DNA of 64,000 nt from Phallusia mammillata (GCA_965637545.1 OZ281499.1:5642001-5706000), one strand, 5' to 3'. Positions 16,609 through 28,143 are shown, counted from the first letter of the stretch. A program made the numbers and translations. Notes: generated by a model from the sequence alone, not told the origin.

Positions 16609-16814
16609 TAGAGCTACTAACACTGGAATTTGGCTAGCACCCGGTCTGGGATTTTCTGATAAGTGGCGCAACGGAGCATAGGCGTTTATGGTGCTGACTC
16701 AGCAATGTGGGTTTATGGTAAGAATAATTGCCGAGTCAGCACCATTCCCGCCTATGCTCTGTCGCGCCACCTACCAAACCGGGCGTTAGCTGAGTTCCAG
16801 TGTCAGTAGTTCTA
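16609..16814. mobile_element. Foldback MITE, TA-flanked (Tc1/mariner-like), upstream of NOMO
   Basis: Arms tagagctactaacactggaa...gtggcgcaacggagcataggcg..atggtgctgactcagcaat and attgccgagtcagcaccat..cgcctatgctctgtcgcgccac...ttccagtgtcagtagttcta are near-perfect reverse complements over ~90 bp. Confidence 0.8.
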
Positions 16815-17519
16815 CCAGAATTATGATGCCGAAAGAACGATTCGCAAAATTGTAACCATTTGTTGTTGATTTTTTAATAAAATCCAAAAGATAGTCCCAA
16901 AGACCCTGAAAAGGAACATTCATTTTCGTCTGTTGAGGAACATAGCCTACATACCGACAATAACGGGCAAAAAAACGGTTTGCTTTATTTTCAGACTTTG
17001 CACAAAGTGAACTCTGAAGAAAGTTTTGTCCCGTCGTTTTCTCCAACCGTTGCGATTTACTGTTTTTTGGCGAACTTGGGATGTACATGTAACGTCATAA
17101 TTGGTAAAATATTTTGAATTCGGTAACGTAAATTGCTTTTGTGCTTTAATCAGTTTTTAGATTGCTTTTGTCGTATTGGCTTGCATTGGTCTTAAGTTGT
17201 AAAGGGTATTTTAAGCAGTTGTACTGTTATGTATGGAGGTTCGATTTTGCAATAACTGCAACTTATTGATGGAATAATTGGCCATTGTTATAATGTTAAA
17301 ACCCTAAAATTAATTTAGGGCCTAAATCCTCTATCATTATGATTGAAACATAACTAATTTTGGTTTAACATCTTGTTTCAGGTACTGTTGGCTTCGTTGT
17401 ACATAATCTGTTCTACTTCGCTGTGCATCAACATTTTTTAGCAAACGTGTAATCACATAGGTAAACTTTGTATTAAAACATTTGGCAACTTGACAACACG
17501 CTTCAGTCGGATGGGACAA

Positions 17520-17575
17520 TGTTTTTTTCAGTTTCTGACATTCTGCATTTCTGTCAGAAACGTCATAAGTTGTTC
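17520..17575 (-). promoter_or_regulatory. SECIS element (type I) of deiodinase A
   Basis: - strand ATGAC-GTTTCTGACA-GAAATGCAGAA-TGTCAGAAAC-TGAA: AUGA/GA core, perfect 10-bp helix II, apical loop with AAA; ~130 nt after the stop. Confidence 0.88.
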
Positions 17576-17700
17576 CGTAACCAATTAAGCAAATCGCCAA
17601 ACATGAACAATGAAACATAAAAAATAAAAAGGTAATTTAAGGCAGTTAAGAAGAAAATATTTGCATTAAACAAATTGCGTGAAATAAAAGTGTTTAAAAG

Positions 17701-18744
17701 TTAGAACTTAGGTTTGTTTTGTTGCCTTTTCAACCACTTTTCCACTTTAGATATTTTATAATGAAAAGGCCCAGTTCCGCCGACGAATTTAATTTTTTTG
17801 TCCACAATCCCATACAACCGGTCGGGCATAGCACCGTAGGACAAATTCGCTTCGTTCGCTACGTTGTCAACCAAGATCGTGACGTCATCGATTTTGACGT
17901 TTTCCCTGAACAACTGCGCAGCGGCTAAACGCCCTTCTGCGCTCATAAGATTCGGGATGTCGGATAAATTAGGATCGTCGTTCGGATGAGCTTCTTGTAT
18001 ATATACGACAACGAAGTCTGCGACGGTCTTGTAAGTTTCAATAAGTTTCTTGAACTTAATGATCTGCAAATGTTATTTAAAGACGGTTTTTATTTGGAAA
18101 TTAAATTTTTTGACAAATTTTTGGCATTGATGCGATTTTTAGGGGCTATGCTAAAACAGCTTAATAAATAATTTTTGACATAAAAATTTAAATCAATTTT
18201 TAAATCAGCAAAACTTTAATTTCAATCAATTTACGCGAATAGTAAGTGACATTTACCAAAGTAATAAAATTATCTGTAGTGAAAACTCAGGGGTTTTCGC
18301 ATCCTTTATCGACAAACTCCTCCCTTAACAATTCAAAACATTTTTACCCCACTCTAATATGCCACATAGTAGATGCAAAACTATACAAACACATTTGAAA
18401 TTGGGTCTTTCACCAACTTCGCAGGCCATAACCTAACTTCAAAGTTTACGTGTCTATTTAGAAACCACATGCAAAAATTTTATTTTTTTGCAGTCTTATG
18501 CAGTAAGCAATTTCATTTTAAACAATAAATAAAAAAATTTCACCTTTTTCATGAAAAAATGTCAGGAACCGGACCCAAAATTGACCACTAGAGGTCGTCC
18601 GGGACGTGAGAACTCGAGAAGATTGCTCTCTTTGCCAGCGTTGAGATCAACAAGTTTCACATCGGGGGCATCACCATTTTGTTTTGCAATTTTATTAAAC
18701 TGTATTTTATGAGCATATATTATCTCGCGTAGTTTGGTCGCCAT
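17701..18744 (-). CDS. DIO: Iodothyronine deiodinase-like selenoprotein A (divergent; 5' exon not located)
   Basis: Exon 18544-18744 MATKLREII...RPLVVNFGSGS-U-HFFMKK (TGA 18564-18562); exon 17701-18063 IIKFKKL...VYIQEAH...YGAMPDRLY...GGTGPFHY. Same phase-0 intron position as paralogs B-D; SECIS downstream. Confidence 0.88.
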
Positions 18745-20455
18745 CTGCAAAACAAACTTATAGCATTAATTTTTTATTTTTTGCTTTTTAAAAAAAATAA
18801 TGCTTTTTGTTGTTGTTATTTTCATTGGGTTTCTAGTCCAAATTCTACCGCATAGTTTTAACAAGAAAAAAAACAACAGATCTCATTGTCCTCATATAGT
18901 TTAAACTATAGGTGAGCAGCACAACGAAGTACCATTTTTTCAATTGAAAAATTTTTTTTTCAATAAAATGCTTCGCATATGCTGTTGTGCTTACGGTTGA
19001 CCGTCGCTGTCTATCAGAAACAAAGCCAACTTTCACACAAAATAAATCATTTAAAACTTAGATCTGACATGCAAGTTGCAAACAGTTTTTATACGTCATG
19101 TAAACTTTGCCGAGCTAAAACGTTTTAATGAACTTATGTTCAAGCACAAGTCAACCATACAACCATACAAGCCGCTGCTCTTATCGGAATGAAACGTTTC
19201 AATTTTAACAAAACCACGCACCGCACTTGTTAACCGCTTGTGAAAGAGTGGCTGAAGTAGGTCAAAACAGTTAAAAAAGAAAAAAAGTTCGCAGAATGCA
19301 CAACCCACGTCGTAAAACGAAATACAACGCTTCTAAAATTTGTTTCGGTCTATGCAAGCTCGCTTGAGTTTCGTACGTTGCGTTTTTCTAATTTTACACA
19401 ACGTTGTGGGTACTTTAGTACAAACCCGGTTAAAATAACATTTTGTCACTTGTTGACACACTTTCGACCACACTTCTCAATGGAACAAAGTAAACAGGTA
19501 CTGTTTTTGCAGCAGGACGACGGTGCTACGAGAAGCAACGGGAATTTTTCTGCATTTATAGCGGAATAATTCTGCACTGTCATTGTGACTAGCTGAACTT
19601 AAAACGATTTAATTACTGTGGTCCTGAAAACGTCACGAAGCTGATGAGCCTAAAAGCATATCGCAGCGAAACGGTTTTTGAAGAATATGTTTCCTTACAC
19701 AACACTGACGACAGTGCTACGTCATACAACGTCATGTCATTTTGCTTACGTGTAAGGAATTAGTATTGCAACTTGTAACTTATTATTTGAAAATACAAAC
19801 ATATGAACACATAGTTGTAAGTAGGCCTAAAAATGGAGTTCTAACCAGAAAGTATACAAGCAGAAACCAAACCTTTAATAAAAAAAGCCAGAAAAAGTAT
19901 CTATTAAACCCTAACCTAGCAAAATTGCAAAAAACGGCCAGAATCAAGTATTTAAATAAAACTTAGCCCAATATCCGGGTTGACCTTTGACCTTACCTTT
20001 ATGGATAGGCATAAATACAATAAAAAAAAATTGCAAGATTTGTATAACTGAAACAATGACTTCTTTTTGTTTCTAAAATTTTTACTGGCAATTGGTTTGT
20101 AAAAAGCGACGTGTCTTATTCATCAAACGTTTCGTTAATAACTCATGCCATCATTGGAAATACCCTTACTGCCGAAACTTTCGATAAAAACATGCGTGTC
20201 GCTTTTAATAACCCATGTTTGCCAGCATATATTAGTTGTACATCTATGTGTCAGCACATGTTAGTTGTAAAATATACAAGTCATGAAAATAAAGACGCCC
20301 CGTTTTAAAACTTCGATTTTGGATTTAGATTAGACTTTAAGTTTGTTTTGCGCAAATTTTGATATGTCGTTATTGCCATGTAAACAACAGAAAGTATAAA
20401 AAATGCAGTAACAATAAAATCTATAGCAAACTTAAAACCTATTGGTAGTCTAGAC

Positions 20456-20745
20456 CAGGGGCTACTCAAACTTTCTTGCTCTGCGACCCCATTTTTTAAA
20501 CAGAAATTTCTACGCGATCCCTTGATGGTTTGCACACAATAGGCATAAAAAAGTCTGACGGATATGGCTACTAGGCTGGCAATACTCTTAAGTTCTACAA
20601 AATGTGTTTAGAGCAGTTTGAATACACGGGAATGATGTTTAAACAATAAATGTACGCACGTATACCATTTCTTGTGACTGACATAAGATTCCATAATGTT
20701 TCGCGACCCCAATTGGGGTCGCGGCCCACATTTTGAGAAGCCCTG
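20456..20745. mobile_element. hAT (Buster/Charlie-like) MITE
   Basis: TIR cagggctactcaaa / tttgagaagccctg; perfect palindromic 8-bp TSD gtctagac (20448-20455, 20746-20753). Confidence 0.9.
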
Positions 20746-21144
20746 GTCTAGACAACGTGATGGGTGCTACATAAAGTAATAATACGTTTTTTTGAGTAAA
20801 GTACAAAAAAAAACTGCTATATATTAACCGCATAATAGCAGACAAGTGAAATTAAAAGTATGAAATTAAAATTCAATCTCAAAAAGATATACAGTGCAGG
20901 GTGTATTTTGTTATGTGGGGAAATACAATTTTAATAGTATGAAAAAAAGGAACAAAACGTATTCCAATGCCATTAATAGTCATAATCTTTCATATTACCG
21001 CAATGACCAGCAGTTTTGTCGTCACGCATGAGTGCTCCGTGTTTCTCGCCCGAATGCAAATTTGCTTTGTACCGGAAAATCAACATCGTCGCTATACACT
21101 AAAAATCTCATATTGTACTTCTGTCATAAAGGAGCAAGTGCAAT

Positions 21145-23050
21145 ATGTTAAGTTTGGCATGGATGTACTTAAAGATTACTGTAGCATCCATAGCTAGTTT
21201 GCTGACCATTTTGCTGGTAGATGTACTTCATCGAATTGGAATTTTCAAACTGACTGGCTACAAGAATGCTGCTATGCCAGAAGGCTTGTTTAAGGTTTGT
21301 ATTTTTAAAACATAGAAATTTATATAGTGTGTAAGATGTTTTACAGTTAGTTTGCTGTCGTTCGGCTTGGATGTATATTGTAGCACCACTGTTTATCTAA
21401 AAGCAACTTCCAGACTTGACAACATATTTGTCAATGCAACTTAATGTGTTAGGTCAGGGTGGCCCAAGACAAGAGAATAAAGGGCCACCGTAGGGTTTGC
21501 CTAATACTTTGCGGGCCGCAAAGTAAAAACTGTTTTGTATCAAATGACTGAATTTAAATTTGCTGTTGCTCACTGACACACTGTTTCAATGTTCCTGTAA
21601 GCACTAACGTTTGTAAAAAGAAGAAAACAAATCCAGTCGTTCAAATGTCGCTACAACGAGTGCAAGCGCTATTATTGCCGTACAAAAGATACATATTGAC
21701 TTGCTATGTGATGATAGGCGTATTAGGGCTTTGGCTATTGCGACCAATTTGATGATTATATGCAATTTTTGCGGTGTGCACAAATGTAAAGCTTGTGTGG
21801 GACAATAATTTAACAACGTAATTCAAGTGTAATGAAAAAAAACCTTTACAGATGACAACACCAAAAGCCATCTTTGCGGAAAATTGGACTCAATTCCATA
21901 TGACAGCGAAAAAGGGGGCGAACGCACCTAACGTCAAACTGCACGTATTGGGTTCCAATCGAATACAGAAATTGTTAGATTTTGCTGCTCCTGGTCGCCC
22001 ACTAGTGATAAACTTTGGCTCCTGCTCTTGACCTCCGTTTATGGAAAAGGTAAATACCCGATACGAGTCAGAGATAAAATACACACATTTATATATGCTT
22101 TTTTTGGTGTATAAGTTCTAGGCATATATTTATGTGATTTCAGCAAAGCAAATATAGTAGATATGATACCTAATACAAGAAGCGTTTGTTAGTGGGCGTC
22201 TCGTAAGGCAGTGGTCTGCAACCACCTGTGCCGGTCCGTGAAGGGTTTGTTACCGGGCCGCGTAAAACTTAGGTTTACATTGAATAAAAGTTGAAATAAC
22301 TGTTATTAGTTTTCAATGCTGAACATTTGTGGTTTTTATAGGCCGGTCCGTGAATAAAAGTTCAGTTTCAAACCGGTCCGCAGTACAAATAAAGCAAAAT
22401 CGTACCACAGCTAAAGCTTACACTACGCTTAAACCAGTCTGTTTTTATTTTTATTTTTTTTAATATATATAAGGAGCCACTGCTCTGTTGTTGTTTTTTC
22501 CTTTCATTTTTTTGTTAGAACACGTCTTAAAATCTTTCTCGTAATGGACTGACAGTGTTATTTTTTCGCTATTACATTGATTACAAAGATGAACAGAGAC
22601 TGATCAAAATGTGTTTAAATCTTTGGTTGTAACCCGCCTAATTCTGCAGTAGCCTAAATGTCTCTCAAACTGTGTTTCTACATGCAGATTGGACAGTTTA
22701 AAAAACTGATCCAAACTTACAAGGACGATGTCGACTTCGTTGTCGTATATATAAGCGAAGCTCATCCTACAGACGGCTGGAATATAACCGGAAATAAATA
22801 CCAAATTTCAAACCACCGTAGCATTGAAGAGCGAATGGACGCAGCGCAATTGTTCAGTGATGAAGTCAACATCGATAACGCTACAATCCTGGTTGATAAC
22901 ATGGACAATGAAGCAAACAATGCTTATGGTGCAACTCCAGAACGTTTGTTTATTGTCTTGGACGGGAAAATTGCTTACATGGGGGGTAAAGGTCCATTGT
23001 TTTACAATCTTAAAGAAATGACTCAAAAATTATTAGAAATGCTGCAATAA
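21145..23050 (+). CDS. DIO: Iodothyronine deiodinase selenoprotein B
   Basis: Exon 21145-21294 (MLSLAWMYLKITVASIASLLTILLVDVLHRIG..., TM anchor); exon 21852-22049 (...RPLVINFGSCS-U-PPFMEK, TGA 22029-22031); exon 22688-23050 (YISEAHPTDGW...SNHRSIEER...YGATPERL). All phase-0 GT-AG. Confidence 0.93.
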
Positions 23051-23087: not shown

Positions 23088-23154
23088 TTTTGCAAATTGT
23101 GACGAAGCGAGTTAAAATCCACGAGGTAACCTCGTTTCTGATTTTACTGCAAAA
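23088..23154 (+). promoter_or_regulatory. SECIS element (type II, GUGA variant) of deiodinase B
   Basis: ttttgca-aatt-GTGAC-gaagcgagtt-AAA-atccacgaggt-aacctcgtttc-TGAT-tttac-tgcaaaa: helix I, G.A core, helix II, AA bulge, mini-stem. Confidence 0.85.
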
Positions 23155-24032: not shown

Positions 24033-26117
24033 ATGTTAAGTTTGGCATGGATGTACTTAAAGATTACTGTAGCATCCATAGCTAGTTTGCTGATCATTTT
24101 GTTGGTCGATGTACTTCATCGAATTGGAATTTTCAAACTGACTGGCTACAAGAATGCTGCTATGCCAGAAGGCGTGTTTAAGGTTTATATTTTTAAAACA
24201 TAGAAATTTATGTAGTATGTAAGATGTTTTACAGTTAGCTTGCTGGTCGTTCGGCTTGGAAGTATATTGTAGCACCACTGTTTGTCTAAAAGTAAGACAA
24301 CATATTTGCCAATGTGACTAAATGTGTTAGGTTAGGGTGGTCCAAGACTAGAGAATAACACATTTTGTTTGTTAAAGTAAAAACTCTTTTGTATTAAATG
24401 ACTGAATTTAAATTGGCTGTTCTAATCGCTTGATGTTTCGAGACCTATAATTAATACAACAAAGTGCACCTGCTGGCACTTATTAACAAGTGCTGATGTT
24501 TGTTACAAAAAGAAAACAAATCGAGGTGTTTAGGTCGTCCCAATAAGCGTGTACTGACCCAGTGGGTAGACAATTAAACACACTCCGTTTATCTGACTCT
24601 AATAATTAAACTATCGCTGCCTAAACAAACAACAAGACGCAAAGCTAAATTAACGTTCCCACATTATATTTTAATAAGGCATACCACGAAAGCGCCTCTT
24701 GCGGCTAAACACGCAACACAAAAGTCACCGCGCCACGAATAATGCGTACTCTGGTCACTCTTGTTACTCTAGTTACTCTAGTTACTGATCGTAAGTCAAA
24801 ATTGATGCAGATTATATAGTTTTCAGGTCACCTAGTTGTTATGCCAGCTAGTCGTAAAAACGTACGCCCGAAAAGATTAACTGTGTTCTAAACCGTAATT
24901 ATTCTTTAAATCGCTTTACAGAAGTGTCACATATAACATGGCTGGAGGCCGAGTAATACGTAGGTTACTGTTAACACGTTAAAAGCGATGCAATAATAGC
25001 CTTAAGCCAGTATATGACCGGTCCAGTAATAAGAAAAACAGGTTTAAATAGCCGGTCAAGCTTTTGTGTAGAAAAAGGTGAGGTTTGACCGAATTTGACC
25101 GGGACGATATGACACGACAATTATACGAATTAAAATGTTTTGAATTAAAAAGTCCAAAGTCCGATATGTTTTAAATGAAAAGTCCAAGGTCCGATACAAG
25201 CGCAAACGCTATTAATGCAACACAATAGATACATATTAACATGTTATTTGGTGATAGACGTATTATTTACCGCGGAGGCTATTGCAACGAATTCGATGAT
25301 TGTATTTTGTATGCAGGTAGTTTACCAAATCGCATAATTTTTACACAATTATAAAATCGTATAATTTAGCGATCACTGCGTTTAGCAAAATGTAAAGCAT
25401 GTGTGGAACTATTTGTAACGTGATTAAAGAATGTTGAAAAAATCTTCACAGATGACTACACCAAAAGCCCTCTTTTCAAAATACTGGATTCTGTTTCACA
25501 TGACAGCAAAAAAGGGGGCGAACGCACCAAACGTTAAACTACACGTCCTGGGTTCCAAACGAATGCAGAAACTTCTGGAATTCGTGACTCCCGGCCGCCC
25601 ACTAGTGATAAACTTTGGCTCCTGCTCTTGACCACCGTTTATGAAAAAGGTGAATATCTGATAACAAGCAGAAATAATAAACACACATTACAGTATTCCG
25701 CCTAATTCTGAAGTAGTCTGCTGAATATCTCCCAAACTGTGTTTCTGCATGCAGATTGGACAGTTCAAAAAACTCGTCCAAACTTACAAGAATGACGCCG
25801 ACTTTGTTGTCGTATATATAAGCGAAGCTCATCCTACAGACGGCTGGAATATAACCGGAAATAAATACCAAATTTCAAACCACCGTAGCATTGAAGAGCG
25901 AATGGACGCAGCGCAATTGTTCAGTGATGAAGTCAACATCGATAACGCAACAATCCTGGTTGATAACATGGACAATGAAGCAAACAATGCTTATGGTGCA
26001 TTTCCAGAACGTTTGTTTATTGTCTTGGATGGTAAAATTGCTTACAAGGGTGGTAGTGGTCCATTGTTTTACAACCTCAACGAAATGACTCAAAACTTAT
26101 TAGAAATGCTGCAATAA
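24033..26117 (+). CDS. DIO: Iodothyronine deiodinase selenoprotein C (tandem duplicate of B)
   Basis: Exons 24033-24182, 25452-25649 (FGSCS-U-PPFMKK, TGA 25629-25631) and 25755-26117; exons 1 and 3 nearly identical to B. Confidence 0.93.
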
Positions 26118-26156: not shown

Positions 26157-26223
26157 TTTTGCAAATTGTGACGAAGCGAGTTGAAATCCACGAGGTAACC
26201 TCGTTTTTGATTTTACTGCAAAA
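26157..26223 (+). promoter_or_regulatory. SECIS element (type II, GUGA variant) of deiodinase C
   Basis: Same fold as the B SECIS: GTGAC-gaagcgagtt-GAA-atccacgaggt-aacctcgtttt-TGAT. Confidence 0.83.
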
Positions 26224-27108: not shown

Positions 27109-28143
27109 CTATTTAAGCAATTTTCTTAAACTGGCTTCGACCTCCTTTACGTTGTAAAACCAAGGTCCAATTCCACCTTTATAAACAATTTTTCCATCCA
27201 GCACAATATAAAAACGTTCGGGGCCTGCTCCATAAGTTACATTGGCTTCGTCCGCCATGTTGTCAACCAAGATCGTGATGTCATCAAGTCTGACGACATC
27301 GCTGAAAAACTGGGCGGCGTCCAACCGTTCTTCCATGTTTCTGTGACTGGCGATTTGATATTTGTTGCCTGATAAGCTCCAACCGTCTGTCGGATGACCC
27401 TCGGTTATATATACGACAACGAAGTCTGCAACGGCCCGGTATCTTTCAACCAAGTCTCTAAACTCGGCCACCTATATTAATGTTATAAGCAATTCTAAAA
27501 TATTCACATTAGTGAACTGGTTATAAACCAATAGAAAAATACCTTGGCCATGAACGGGGGTCAGGAACAAGACCCAAAGTTCACCACCAGGGGGCGACCG
27601 AGATTTGCAATACTGAGCAACGATTTTTGTGTTTTCGTTGCGAGGTCGATTAGTTTCACATCGGGTGGTTTCTTTCCAAGTTCAGCAGATGCTCGTTCCT
27701 GCGTCAATCGTTGTTGGAAAACAGCTGCAAACGTTTTCGCCTAAAAAAAGAAACTCACTTGGTTTTATTAAAACCTACTTAAAACCTTCTCGAACGCCGG
27801 GCGATTTATGCAAAACGCAGTTAATTTCGGAGCAGCTTTGAAATGTCTTTAAAATGTGACGTAAGAGTAAAAAACAGGATTATGCGTTAACAAAACAAAA
27901 AGGAACAATATCAAATTATTCTTAAGAAATTTCGTAAAAAAAAAATTTCTTAAGAAATCTGTAAAAAATTGAGTGTAATGGTTTTCGCACCTGAATGATC
28001 CGATGTTTCGGAGGTGGGCCGTTCATCCAATGAGCGGGAATGTAATCAGCAAATATACACTTTAAGTCTCTTTTGCTGAGCTGAAACAAATCGGAGACTG
28101 TTCCCATCAATGCCCTCACCAACACCAAAAGGAAACCAAACAT
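27109..28143 (-). CDS. DIO: Iodothyronine deiodinase selenoprotein D
   Basis: Exon 27991-28143 (MFGFLLVLVRALMGTV...); exon 27543-27740 (...RPLVVNFGSCS-U-PPFMAK, TGA 27563-27561); exon 27109-27471 (YITEGHPTDGW...ASHRNMEER...YGAGPERF). Confidence 0.92.

What the first reader, a model, noticed from the sequence alone, without database searches (positions are those of the whole stretch)
17520..18744. Deiodinase A keeps Sec and a perfect SECIS but has a rewritten active site: a possible new selenoenzyme activity
Seen: the motif is FGSGS-U-HFF, whereas B, C and D have FGSCS-U-PPF. After EAH, PTDGWNITGNKYQISNHRS becomes PNDDPNLS----DIPNLMS (GW lost, 4-aa deletion, His to Leu). Known: family consensus is S[CA]T-U-P[PS]F. 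In the mouse Dio3 structure His219 contributes to substrate binding/proton relay alongside Y197/E200/H202, and the loop after EAH is the deiodinase-specific insertion. Y, E and the first H are retained. An intact ORF plus a perfect 10-bp SECIS helix argue against a pseudogene. Inference: a neofunctionalised Sec thioredoxin-fold enzyme acting on another substrate (other iodo/bromo-aromatics, TH derivatives, or redox chemistry), or a non-catalytic partner.
Basis: partly seen in the sequence, partly recalled or inferred. Interest (0 to 1): 0.8.

Follow-up and report, generated by a model that had tools for sequence, protein, structure and literature searches.

The report
Divergent sea-squirt deiodinase selenoprotein gene
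One of four neighbouring thyroid-hormone-deiodinase-like genes in the sea squirt Phallusia mammillata is a real, transcribed selenoprotein gene whose substrate pocket has been remodelled, so it may act on a different substrate, but no function was tested.

Summary
The window is Phallusia mammillata and carries four deiodinase (DIO) family genes. Copy A (minus strand, 18744-17704, two exons) reads FGSGS-U-HFF where B, C and D read FGSCS-U-PPF. Its loop after EAH is 4 residues shorter and lacks the conserved Gly-Trp and the second His.

A is not a dead copy. Transcript contigs from four studies show the 480-nt intron removed. They also show the tunicate spliced leader joined directly before the ATG. 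The product is therefore 187 residues, has no membrane anchor and contains no cysteine. A form-1 SECIS-like hairpin lies in the transcribed 3' UTR, although Rfam's SECIS model does not score it. A keeps every family column that is at least 90% conserved. Neutral drift would rarely leave this frame open (0.07-0.26% of simulations).

"New activity" remains an inference. Each loop change occurs elsewhere in the family, and Gly at -2 occurs in lamprey DIO3. Only His at +1 and Phe at +2 were absent from 55 surveyed relatives. No ortholog could be examined, and one transcript contig carries a frameshift.

UniProt A0A6F9DAE7 is this gene truncated at the UGA. A 2021 paper used that entry as the species' only DIO.

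The scan's own note on the four-gene cluster (s1-358958) covers this same DNA.

The parts
18745..18746 (-). AG trans-splice acceptor; the tunicate spliced leader is joined here, directly before the start codon
   Evidence: Loose ends of contigs in runs X6 and X8 read, on the RNA strand, ATTCTATTTGAATA followed by the genomic AG. Together these give the 16-nt Ciona spliced leader (sequence in PMC1488885). X8 also carries a cDNA-adapter tail before it.
18544..18744 (-). Coding exon 1 of gene A (codons 1-67, MATKL...FGSGS-U-HFFMKK); no hydrophobic N-terminal segment
   Evidence: Translation. Pfam PF00837 at 38.1 bits. Residue 12 onward aligns to residue 8 onward of the crystallised Dio3 catalytic domain.
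18553..18579 (-). Active-site motif F-G-S-G-S-Sec-H-F-F (residues 56-64)
   Evidence: In a survey of 55 relatives, none has G at -2, H at +1 or F at +2.
18562..18564 (-). In-frame TGA, codon 61, at the family's Sec position
   Evidence: Aligned with the TGA of B, C and D and with the Sec/Cys/'W' column of relatives.
18064..18543 (-). Intron, 480 nt, GT..AG, at the same position as in B, C and D
   Evidence: The joint 18063^18544 is seen in one contig from each of 4 runs from 4 studies. The junction MKK|IIKF matches UniProt A0A6F9DAE7. Boundaries in B-D were read.
17704..18063 (-). Coding exon 2 (codons 68-187), followed by TAA at 17703-17701
   Evidence: Pfam PF00837 at 92.8 bits. E=1.9e-17 to Dio2 (9H48) and 4.4e-17 to Dio3 (4TR3). 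The 120 codons match residues 4-123 of P0001 at 100%.
17929..17994 (-). EAH plus the shortened omega-loop (residues 91-112: EAHPNDDPNLSDIPNLMSAEGR)
   Evidence: The distance from E200 to R225 is 21 residues against 24-26 in most relatives.
17514..17576 (-). SECIS-like element, form 1. Helix I is GGAACAA/TTGTCC. The core is ATGA (17566-17563) and TGA (17530-17528). Helix II is 10 bp and the apical loop is GAAATGCAGAA.
   Evidence: Fold. A pattern scan gave 4 hits in the window against 0.6 in shuffles, and this hit has the best pairing. It lies inside the transcribed 3' UTR. Rfam SECIS_1 does not score it.
17458..17703 (-). Stop codon and 3' UTR up to the end of the transcript contigs
   Evidence: Contigs end at 17458, 17461 and 17483.
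17793..17799 (-). A7 run in codons 156-158, where one transcript contig has an extra base (frameshift, stop soon after)
   Evidence: table 4: an extra T after 17792 in X6 only. It is absent in X1, X4 and X8.

Best explanation
Gene A is a working selenoprotein gene of Phallusia mammillata. It is a tandem duplicate of the neighbouring canonical deiodinase genes.

Shown: its mRNA is the 16-nt spliced leader, the ATG, two exons and a roughly 245-nt 3' UTR.

Inferred: the UGA at codon 61 is read as selenocysteine with the help of a form-1 SECIS hairpin in the 3' UTR. The product would be a 187-residue soluble thioredoxin-fold protein that corresponds to the bare DIO catalytic domain. It has no membrane anchor and no cysteine.

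Shown: it keeps the Ser/Thr(Ser)/Tyr/Glu/His network that anchors and activates Sec. It has replaced the residues flanking Sec (Cys-2 to Gly, Pro+1 to His, Pro+2 to Phe). It has also shortened the omega-loop and lost the loop's Trp and second His.

Inferred: it still performs Sec-based reductive chemistry, most likely dehalogenation. Its substrate pocket is altered and it depends on an external thiol for regeneration, because it has no internal resolving cysteine. I rate 'real Sec protein under constraint' at about 0.8 and 'changed substrate or cofactor use' at about 0.5.
For: - **Homology:** Pfam PF00837 matches both exons. The closest solved structures are Dio2 and Dio3.
- **Transcription:** the spliced, leader-bearing transcript is present in contigs of 4 runs from 4 studies. 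A further 14 RNA-like runs hold 36-58% of the sampled words, which fits an intron-less form. The mRNA-derived UniProt entry matches exactly.
- **SECIS:** the hairpin is the minimum-free-energy fold. The pattern scan expects about 0.6 chance hits in 128 kb, so roughly 0.001 in this 3' UTR.
- **Constraint:** A keeps 47 of 63 family-conserved columns and every column that is at least 90% conserved. The frame, ATG and TGA survive in only 0.07-0.26% of neutral simulations at the divergence of A's own branch.
- **Origin:** the nearest rows in both trees are C, B and D. Monophyly of A-D is not rejected, p-AU 0.27. Intron positions are identical in all four genes.
- **Where the changes fall:** 6 of the 12 A-specific changes at conserved columns are at -2, +1 and +2 of Sec and at G206, W207 and H219. 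The literature places most of these on the T4 pocket and the loop hinge (PMC7506546; PMC11592359).
Against: - Rfam's SECIS_1 covariance model gives no match for A at E<=10, even on 86 nt. B and C score 22-24 bits.
- No ortholog of A was found or could be searched. The libraries lack even the window's own B, C and D, so conservation across species is untested.
- dS is saturated, so no lineage-specific dN/dS could be obtained.
- The test of whether A's changes avoid conserved columns is not significant (42/54 against 25/39, p=0.17).
- A evolves 2-3 times faster than D or B/C.
- One transcript contig (X6) has a frameshifting extra base in an A7 run.
- No protein-level or activity data exist.
Confidence: 0.6

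Rival explanations
1. A is an ordinary iodothyronine deiodinase. The unusual residues are tolerated variation of a plastic family, and A is simply a soluble isoform that acts on T4/T3-like hormones. At most it differs in ring preference or inhibitor sensitivity.
For: The -2 position is Ala in DIO2 and Gly in lamprey DIO3. Position +1 is not Pro in 6 of 55 relatives and +2 varies among P, V, I, S, M and A. 27% of relatives lack Trp207 and 21% lack His219. In Dio1, replacing the His219 equivalent with Gln or Asn raised Km without changing Vmax (PMC7506546). The catalytic network S167, T169(S), Y197, E200 and H202 is intact. T4 deiodination in vivo has been reported in this species (PMC8143656).
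Against: The combination is rare. No surveyed relative has His at +1 or Phe at +2, and only 5 of 181 have a loop this short. Three canonical paralogs sit next door and could cover hormone deiodination. A's conserved-column losses fall largely on the pocket.
Confidence: 0.25
2. A is a decaying or dispensable duplicate. It is still transcribed but no longer makes a useful selenoprotein.
For: A has the fastest-evolving branch of the four genes. It has lost 16 of 63 family-conserved residues against 6-8 in B-D. One contig carries a frameshift variant. Rfam SECIS is negative. One run of a study that otherwise holds the transcript has almost none of it.
Against: The 187-codon frame is open, with the ATG, the TGA and both splice sites kept. 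Neutral simulation gives 0.07-0.26% at K=0.3 and about 2% at K=0.15. The only indels are in frame. All columns that are at least 90% conserved are kept. The helix-II pairing is perfect. Transcripts are present in 4 of the 4 studies laid.
Confidence: 0.1
3. The UGA is a plain stop. The gene would then yield a 60-residue peptide, or by re-initiation at Met65 the 123-residue C-terminal fragment that databases annotate.
For: UniProt and NCBI annotate only the 123-residue product. An AUG lies 9 nt after the UGA. Rfam SECIS is negative.
Against: The TGA sits exactly at the family's Sec column, and both flanks are conserved as one Pfam domain. A SECIS-like hairpin lies in the 3' UTR. The Met belongs to the conserved [PS]FM motif of all DIOs. 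Neither fragment would form a complete thioredoxin fold.
Confidence: 0.05

Closest known systems
Vertebrate iodothyronine deiodinases DIO1-3 (structures 4TR3/4TR4 mouse Dio3, 9H48 mouse Dio2)
   Same: Same Pfam family. Sec is at the same position after FGS. The Ser167, Thr169(Ser), Tyr197, Glu200, His202 and Arg225 equivalents are kept, as are the thioredoxin-fold core motifs (RPLV, DFxxxYIxEAH, VD, PxRLY, GGxGP). Like DIO2, it has no proximal Cys..
   Different: No transmembrane, hinge or linker region. U-HFF in place of U-P[PS]F. DGW replaced by DDP. Omega-loop 4 residues shorter. His219 replaced by Leu. No cysteine anywhere. Activity unknown.
Neighbouring paralogs B, C and D in the same window, and the Halocynthia roretzi deiodinase (Q6U6H1, Shepherdley 2004, as cited in PMC8143656)
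   Same: Same two coding exons and the same intron position. 47-50% amino-acid identity. Shared ascidian signatures (FKKLI.TYK, ADFVVVYI, AAQLF, TILVDN, NEAN). Each has its own TGA and a 3' hairpin..
   Different: B, C and D keep FGSCS-U-PPF, DGW and the second His. D has an upstream exon with a hydrophobic N-terminus, as does the H. roretzi enzyme. The SECIS elements of B and C look like form 2 and have a GUGA core.
Amphioxus non-seleno deiodinase specific for TRIAC (Klootwijk 2011, as cited in PMC8143656)
   Same: A precedent for an invertebrate-chordate DIO paralog with an altered catalytic site that acts on a substrate other than T4/T3.
   Different: That enzyme has Cys in place of Sec, and its activity was measured. 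A keeps Sec and is untested.
One-cysteine peroxiredoxin-type thioredoxin-fold enzymes
   Same: A single redox-active residue in a T/S-x-x-C/U context, with regeneration by an external reductant. The DIO mechanism is described as Prx-like (PMC11592359).
   Different: No sequence match to Prx families was found. Pfam reports only PF00837. Peroxidase activity is speculation.

Membership tests
Iodothyronine deiodinase protein family (Pfam PF00837) | Significant match to the family profile over the catalytic domain | tested here: met
   Exon 1 scores 38.1 bits and exon 2 scores 92.8 bits against a cut-off of 27. Together they cover profile positions 57-236 of 237.
Iodothyronine deiodinase protein family (Pfam PF00837) | Sec (UGA) or Cys at the catalytic position after F-G-S-x-[ST] | tested here: met
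   TGA at codon 61 in FGSGS-U, aligned with the Sec/Cys column of 55 relatives.
Iodothyronine deiodinase protein family (Pfam PF00837) | Pro at +1 and [PS] at +2 after Sec (U-P-[PS]-F) | tested here: not met
   A has H-F-F. In the survey, +1 is Pro in 49 of 55 relatives and never His, +2 is never Phe, and +3 is Phe as in A.
Iodothyronine deiodinase protein family (Pfam PF00837) | Hydrogen-bond and proton-relay residues Ser167, Thr169, Tyr197, Glu200, His202 (mouse Dio3 numbering) | tested here: met
   S58, S60 (Ser also in B-D), Y88, E91 and H93 are present. Their roles are described in PMC7506546 and PMC11592359.
Iodothyronine deiodinase protein family (Pfam PF00837) | Second conserved His (Dio3 His219) at the C-terminal end of the omega-loop | tested here: not met
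   Leu106 in A. His is present in 143 of 181 relatives.
Iodothyronine deiodinase protein family (Pfam PF00837) | AHxxDGW motif (Trp207) | tested here: not met
   A has AHPNDDP. Trp is present in 154 of 212 relatives.
Vertebrate-type membrane-anchored deiodinase architecture | N-terminal transmembrane segment, hinge and linker | tested here: not met
   The spliced leader is joined directly before the ATG, and the protein starts 11 residues before the point where the crystallised Dio3 core aligns. No joint to an upstream exon appears in the 4 runs.
Eukaryotic selenoprotein gene | [quoted passage not shown] | tested here: met
   All motif features are present at 17576-17514, inside the transcribed UTR. 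A caveat is that the curated Rfam SECIS_1 model gives no match. SECISearch3 was not available.
Iodothyronine deiodinase (enzyme activity) | Reductive deiodination of T4, T3 or rT3 | not testable with these tools
   Needs a recombinant enzyme assay.

The most novel reading that the evidence does not exclude
A is a soluble, cysteine-free selenoenzyme that has left thyroid-hormone metabolism. In this reading the Sec-His pair and the collapsed omega-loop create a pocket for a different halogenated aromatic (iodo- or bromotyrosines, tunic or blood-cell metabolites) or for a peroxide-type substrate. That would make it a new catalytic subtype of the deiodinase fold.
Probability: 0.25. Interest if true: 0.7.

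Novelty: new variant of a known kind. Interest (0 to 1): 0.45.

Why it matters
Deiodinase-family expansions in invertebrates are known, but almost none of the paralogs has a measured function. The amphioxus TRIAC enzyme shows that such paralogs can hold surprises. This copy keeps selenocysteine while changing the residues either side of it and the loop thought to set substrate choice. That makes it a natural experiment on what those residues do.

There is also a practical point. The only P. mammillata 'DIO' in UniProt (A0A6F9DAE7) is this atypical paralog, cut off at the UGA. A published comparison of chordate thyroid toolkits (PMC8699336) used it as the species' single DIO. That paper read the missing N-terminal half as a property of tunicate enzymes. 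The genome in fact has four genes, three of them canonical, and the 'missing half' is at least here an annotation artefact.

Tried and rejected
- **Rfam SECIS_1:** three queries of decreasing size (15 kb, 261 nt, 86 nt) gave no match for A, and a query on D's 3' region gave none for D. B and C gave weak matches. I therefore relied on my own motif scan with shuffles, and on folding.
- **Word-index protein search with the 60-residue N-terminal piece:** no candidates.
- **Exact look-up of P0001 on assembled contigs:** not on record.
- **Search for an A-type ortholog:** the best non-self hits are at most 51% identical. This absence is uninformative, because the window's own B, C and D are not in those libraries either.
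- **P0057, a metagenome relative that also lacks Gly-Trp:** its contig shows a canonical FGSCT-U-PPF site, so it is not A-like.
- **An old, separate DIO clade as A's origin:** rejected. A's nearest rows are its neighbours, it shares their intron position, and the AU test allows A-D to be one clade.
- **Pairwise dN/dS:** dS is saturated or undefined for A against B and C. The A-D value of 0.42-0.48 is unreliable.
- **Operon membership:** no transcript contigs lie between 18747 and 20458, and there are no convincing ORFs between A and B.
- **Structure prediction of full-length A:** not run.

Full report
**What is there**

The finding lies on the minus strand. Translating 18750-18480 gives ...MATKLREIIYAHK...VVNFGSGS-TGA-HFFMKK followed by a GT. 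The ORF at 18069-17701 continues with IIKFKKLIETYK...EAHPNDDPNLSDIPNLMS...KPKF.

tblastn with these pieces finds three more copies in the window. B is at 21849-23032 (+), C is at 25449-26099 (+) and D is at 27665-27121 (-). All three read FGSCS-TGA-PPFM. All pieces match Pfam T4_deiodinase (PF00837) above the curated cut-off.

The organism is Phallusia mammillata. Exon 2 matches UniProt A0A6F9DAE7 / CAB3238003.1 at 100% over all 120 codons. That entry is a 123-residue 'iodothyronine deiodinase' beginning MKKIIKF. It starts at the Met four codons after the TGA, which also confirms the exon junction MKK|IIKF.

**The gene model, from transcripts**

I laid contigs of four RNA-like runs from four studies on 17100-23050.
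- Each run has one contig covering about 17458/17483-18063 joined to 18544-18746. The 480 skipped bases have CT..AC ends, which is GT..AG on the minus strand.
- Two contigs carry loose 5' ends. On the RNA strand these read ATTCTATTTGAATA, followed by the genomic AG.
- Together that is the 16-nt tunicate spliced leader ATTCTATTTGAATAAG (PMC1488885). One of the two is also preceded by a cDNA-adapter tail.

The mRNA is therefore spliced leader, ATG (18744), 201 nt, 360 nt, TAA (17703-17701), and a 3' UTR of about 245 nt. The CDS is 187 codons with TGA at codon 61.

No upstream exon is joined, so the protein has no membrane anchor. Its residue 12 aligns with residue 8 of the crystallised soluble Dio3 core. 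The protein contains no cysteine. B and C have the same AG|ATG arrangement and the same intron position. D has an upstream exon with a hydrophobic start.

**SECIS**

On the minus strand, 137 nt after the stop, lies ATGA-C-GTTTCTGACA-GAAATGCAGAA-TGTCAGAAAC-TGA. It is flanked by GGAACAA...TTGTCC. The minimum-free-energy fold is exactly this: helix I, an internal loop, a 10-bp perfect helix II and an 11-nt loop with AAA.

A motif scan I wrote required R-TGA-N, a 9-13 nt arm with at most one mismatch, AA, the return arm and N-GA. It gives four hits in the whole window on both strands. These are A, B and two unexplained hits, against a mean of 0.6 in shuffles. That puts the chance expectation inside this UTR at roughly 0.001. 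The scan missed C's element and found none for D, so it is not exhaustive.

Against this, Rfam's SECIS_1 model scores B and C at only 22-24 bits. It does not report A or D at all, even on an 86-nt query. That model expects the extra mini-stem of form-2 elements, which A lacks. I read A's element as a form-1 SECIS, but a dedicated SECIS tool should confirm it.

**How unusual is the active site?**

Mapping onto mouse Dio3 gives this picture.
- Kept: S167, T169 (Ser, as in B-D), U170, F173, Y197, E200, H202, P203, D205, I216/P217 and R225.
- Changed: C168G, P171H, P172F, G206D, W207P, H219L and R220M, plus a 4-residue deletion within the loop.

In 55 relatives whose Sec/Cys site is readable:
- Position -2 is C in 43, and otherwise Y, V, S, W, I, L or A.
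- Position +1 is P in 49, and otherwise T, A, D, Q or S.
- Position +2 is P in 38, and otherwise V, I, S, M or A.
- Position +3 is F in 54.

None of these relatives has G, H or F at -2, +1 or +2 respectively. However, lamprey DIO3 in the supplement of PMC8699336 reads FGSGS-U-PPF.

Among the relatives in hand, Trp207 is present in 154 of 212 and His219 in 143 of 181. The Glu200-to-Arg225 distance is 24-26 in most. It is 21 in A, and only 5 of 181 are that short.

Each change therefore has precedents, except His at +1 and Phe at +2. It is the combination that is rare.

The literature places these residues on the hormone pocket.
- Pro171 and Pro172 kink helix alpha-1 at the Sec end of the pocket.
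- Trp207 stacks on His202 and drives the loop conformation.
- His219 ties the loop end to Arg225 and Tyr197, and in Dio1 it affects Km rather than Vmax (PMC7506546).
- The second Pro flanks the invagination leading to Sec. Its replacement by Ser in DIO1 is thought to widen the site (PMC11592359).
- The proximal Cys is part of the proposed Prx-like re-reduction cascade and is naturally absent in DIO2.

**Is it under constraint?**

A keeps the family's majority residue at 47 of 63 conserved columns, against 55-57 for B, C and D. It keeps every column that is at least 90% conserved: R50, P51, V53, F56, G57, S58, F84, Y88, E91, A92, H93, R112, A116, D133, R149, G162, G165, P166 and L178.

Of its 12 private changes at conserved columns, six are the active-site and loop residues above. 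Several of the others are conservative, such as M to V, E to D and Y to F.

A direct test of whether A's changes avoid conserved columns is not significant (p=0.17).

Pairwise dN is 0.43-0.48 for A against B-D and 0.32 for B against D. This puts about 0.3 on A's own branch. dS is saturated, so no reliable omega can be given.

I simulated neutral substitution at K=0.3 on B, C or D. The frame, the ATG and the TGA stayed intact in 0.07-0.26% of runs, and in about 2% at K=0.15. The only indels relative to the paralogs are in frame. Long neutral decay is therefore unlikely, but recent relaxation cannot be excluded.

One transcript contig (run X6) has an extra base in the A7 run at 17793-17799. That change would truncate the last 30 residues. 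The other three runs do not have it.

**Origin**

In a 146-row tree, A groups with B, C, D, Oikopleura and three metagenome sequences (SH-aLRT 92). A's end branch is 0.57, against 0.27 for D and about 0.2 for B/C.

In a careful 46-row tree, its nearest rows are again C, B and D. These sit on the tunicate-type side of a 93/97 split from vertebrate, amphioxus and protostome sequences. Holding A-D together is not rejected (p-AU 0.27).

With the shared intron position and shared ascidian motifs, A is a local duplicate that diverged quickly. It is not an ancient separate lineage.

**Orthologs**

None could be examined. Searches of the large protein libraries return only A's own UniProt fragment above 51% identity, and nothing for the N-terminal piece. 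Those libraries lack even B, C and D of this window, so the blank says nothing. The P. fumigata sequence in PMC8699336 is of the B/C type.

**Comparison with what is published**

Tunicates are said to have 'at least 2' DIO homologs, and the H. roretzi enzyme is a Sec-containing outer-ring deiodinase (PMC8143656). T4 deiodination in vivo was first shown in this very species (same paper).

PMC8699336 used A0A6F9DAE7 as the single P. mammillata DIO. [quoted passage not shown] For this gene the missing half is the part upstream of the UGA.

**Verdict**

The gene is real, expressed and very probably a selenoprotein. It is a new, atypical variant within the deiodinase family: soluble, cysteine-free, with U-HFF and a short loop. 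That it has a new activity is a reasonable but untested hypothesis. An ordinary deiodinase with tolerated changes and a dispensable fast-evolving copy both remain live alternatives.

Noticed in passing
window 23089-23153 (+) and 26158-26222 (+): The SECIS elements of B and C have GUGA rather than AUGA in the core, and an AAAA bulge plus mini-stem (form 2). They score only 22-24 bits against Rfam SECIS_1, below the gathering score of 35.
   Followed up: partly
window 27069-27010 (-), 3' of gene D: D's candidate SECIS (ATGACGATTTTCGGTT...GGCTGTAAATTCGAT) pairs only with several G-U wobbles and one mismatch, and Rfam does not detect it. D also reads EGH instead of the near-invariant EAH.
   Followed up: partly
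window about 27900-28143 (-): D alone has an upstream coding exon beginning MFGFLLVLVRALMG..., a hydrophobic, anchor-like N-terminus. A, B and C instead have an AG acceptor directly before their ATG.
   Followed up: partly
window 16670-16764 (-): A near-perfect long hairpin matches the plant family MIR171_2 at E=4e-5 (36 bits, below gathering). It lies about 0.7 kb beyond A's 3' end. It could be an inverted repeat or an unannotated small-RNA precursor.
   Followed up: no
window 1083 (+) and 8242 (+): Two further matches to my SECIS-like pattern with no known selenoprotein gene beside them. About 0.6 such matches are expected by chance in the window.
   Followed up: no
window 20459-20745: Short pieces of many transcript contigs (33-46 nt) align here, with unrelated sequence on both sides, in all four runs. 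This looks like a repeated exon or a repeat element between A and B. No convincing ORF was found.
   Followed up: partly
window 17793-17799: The contig of run X6 has A8 instead of A7 in gene A's coding sequence, which gives a frameshift and an early stop. It may be an allele, transcriptional slippage or an assembly error.
   Followed up: no
UniProt A0A6F9DAE7 / CAB3238003.1 (window 18552-17704, spliced): The database entry for this gene starts at Met65 after the UGA, so it lacks the Sec and the N-terminal third. PMC8699336 used it as the only P. mammillata DIO.
   Followed up: yes
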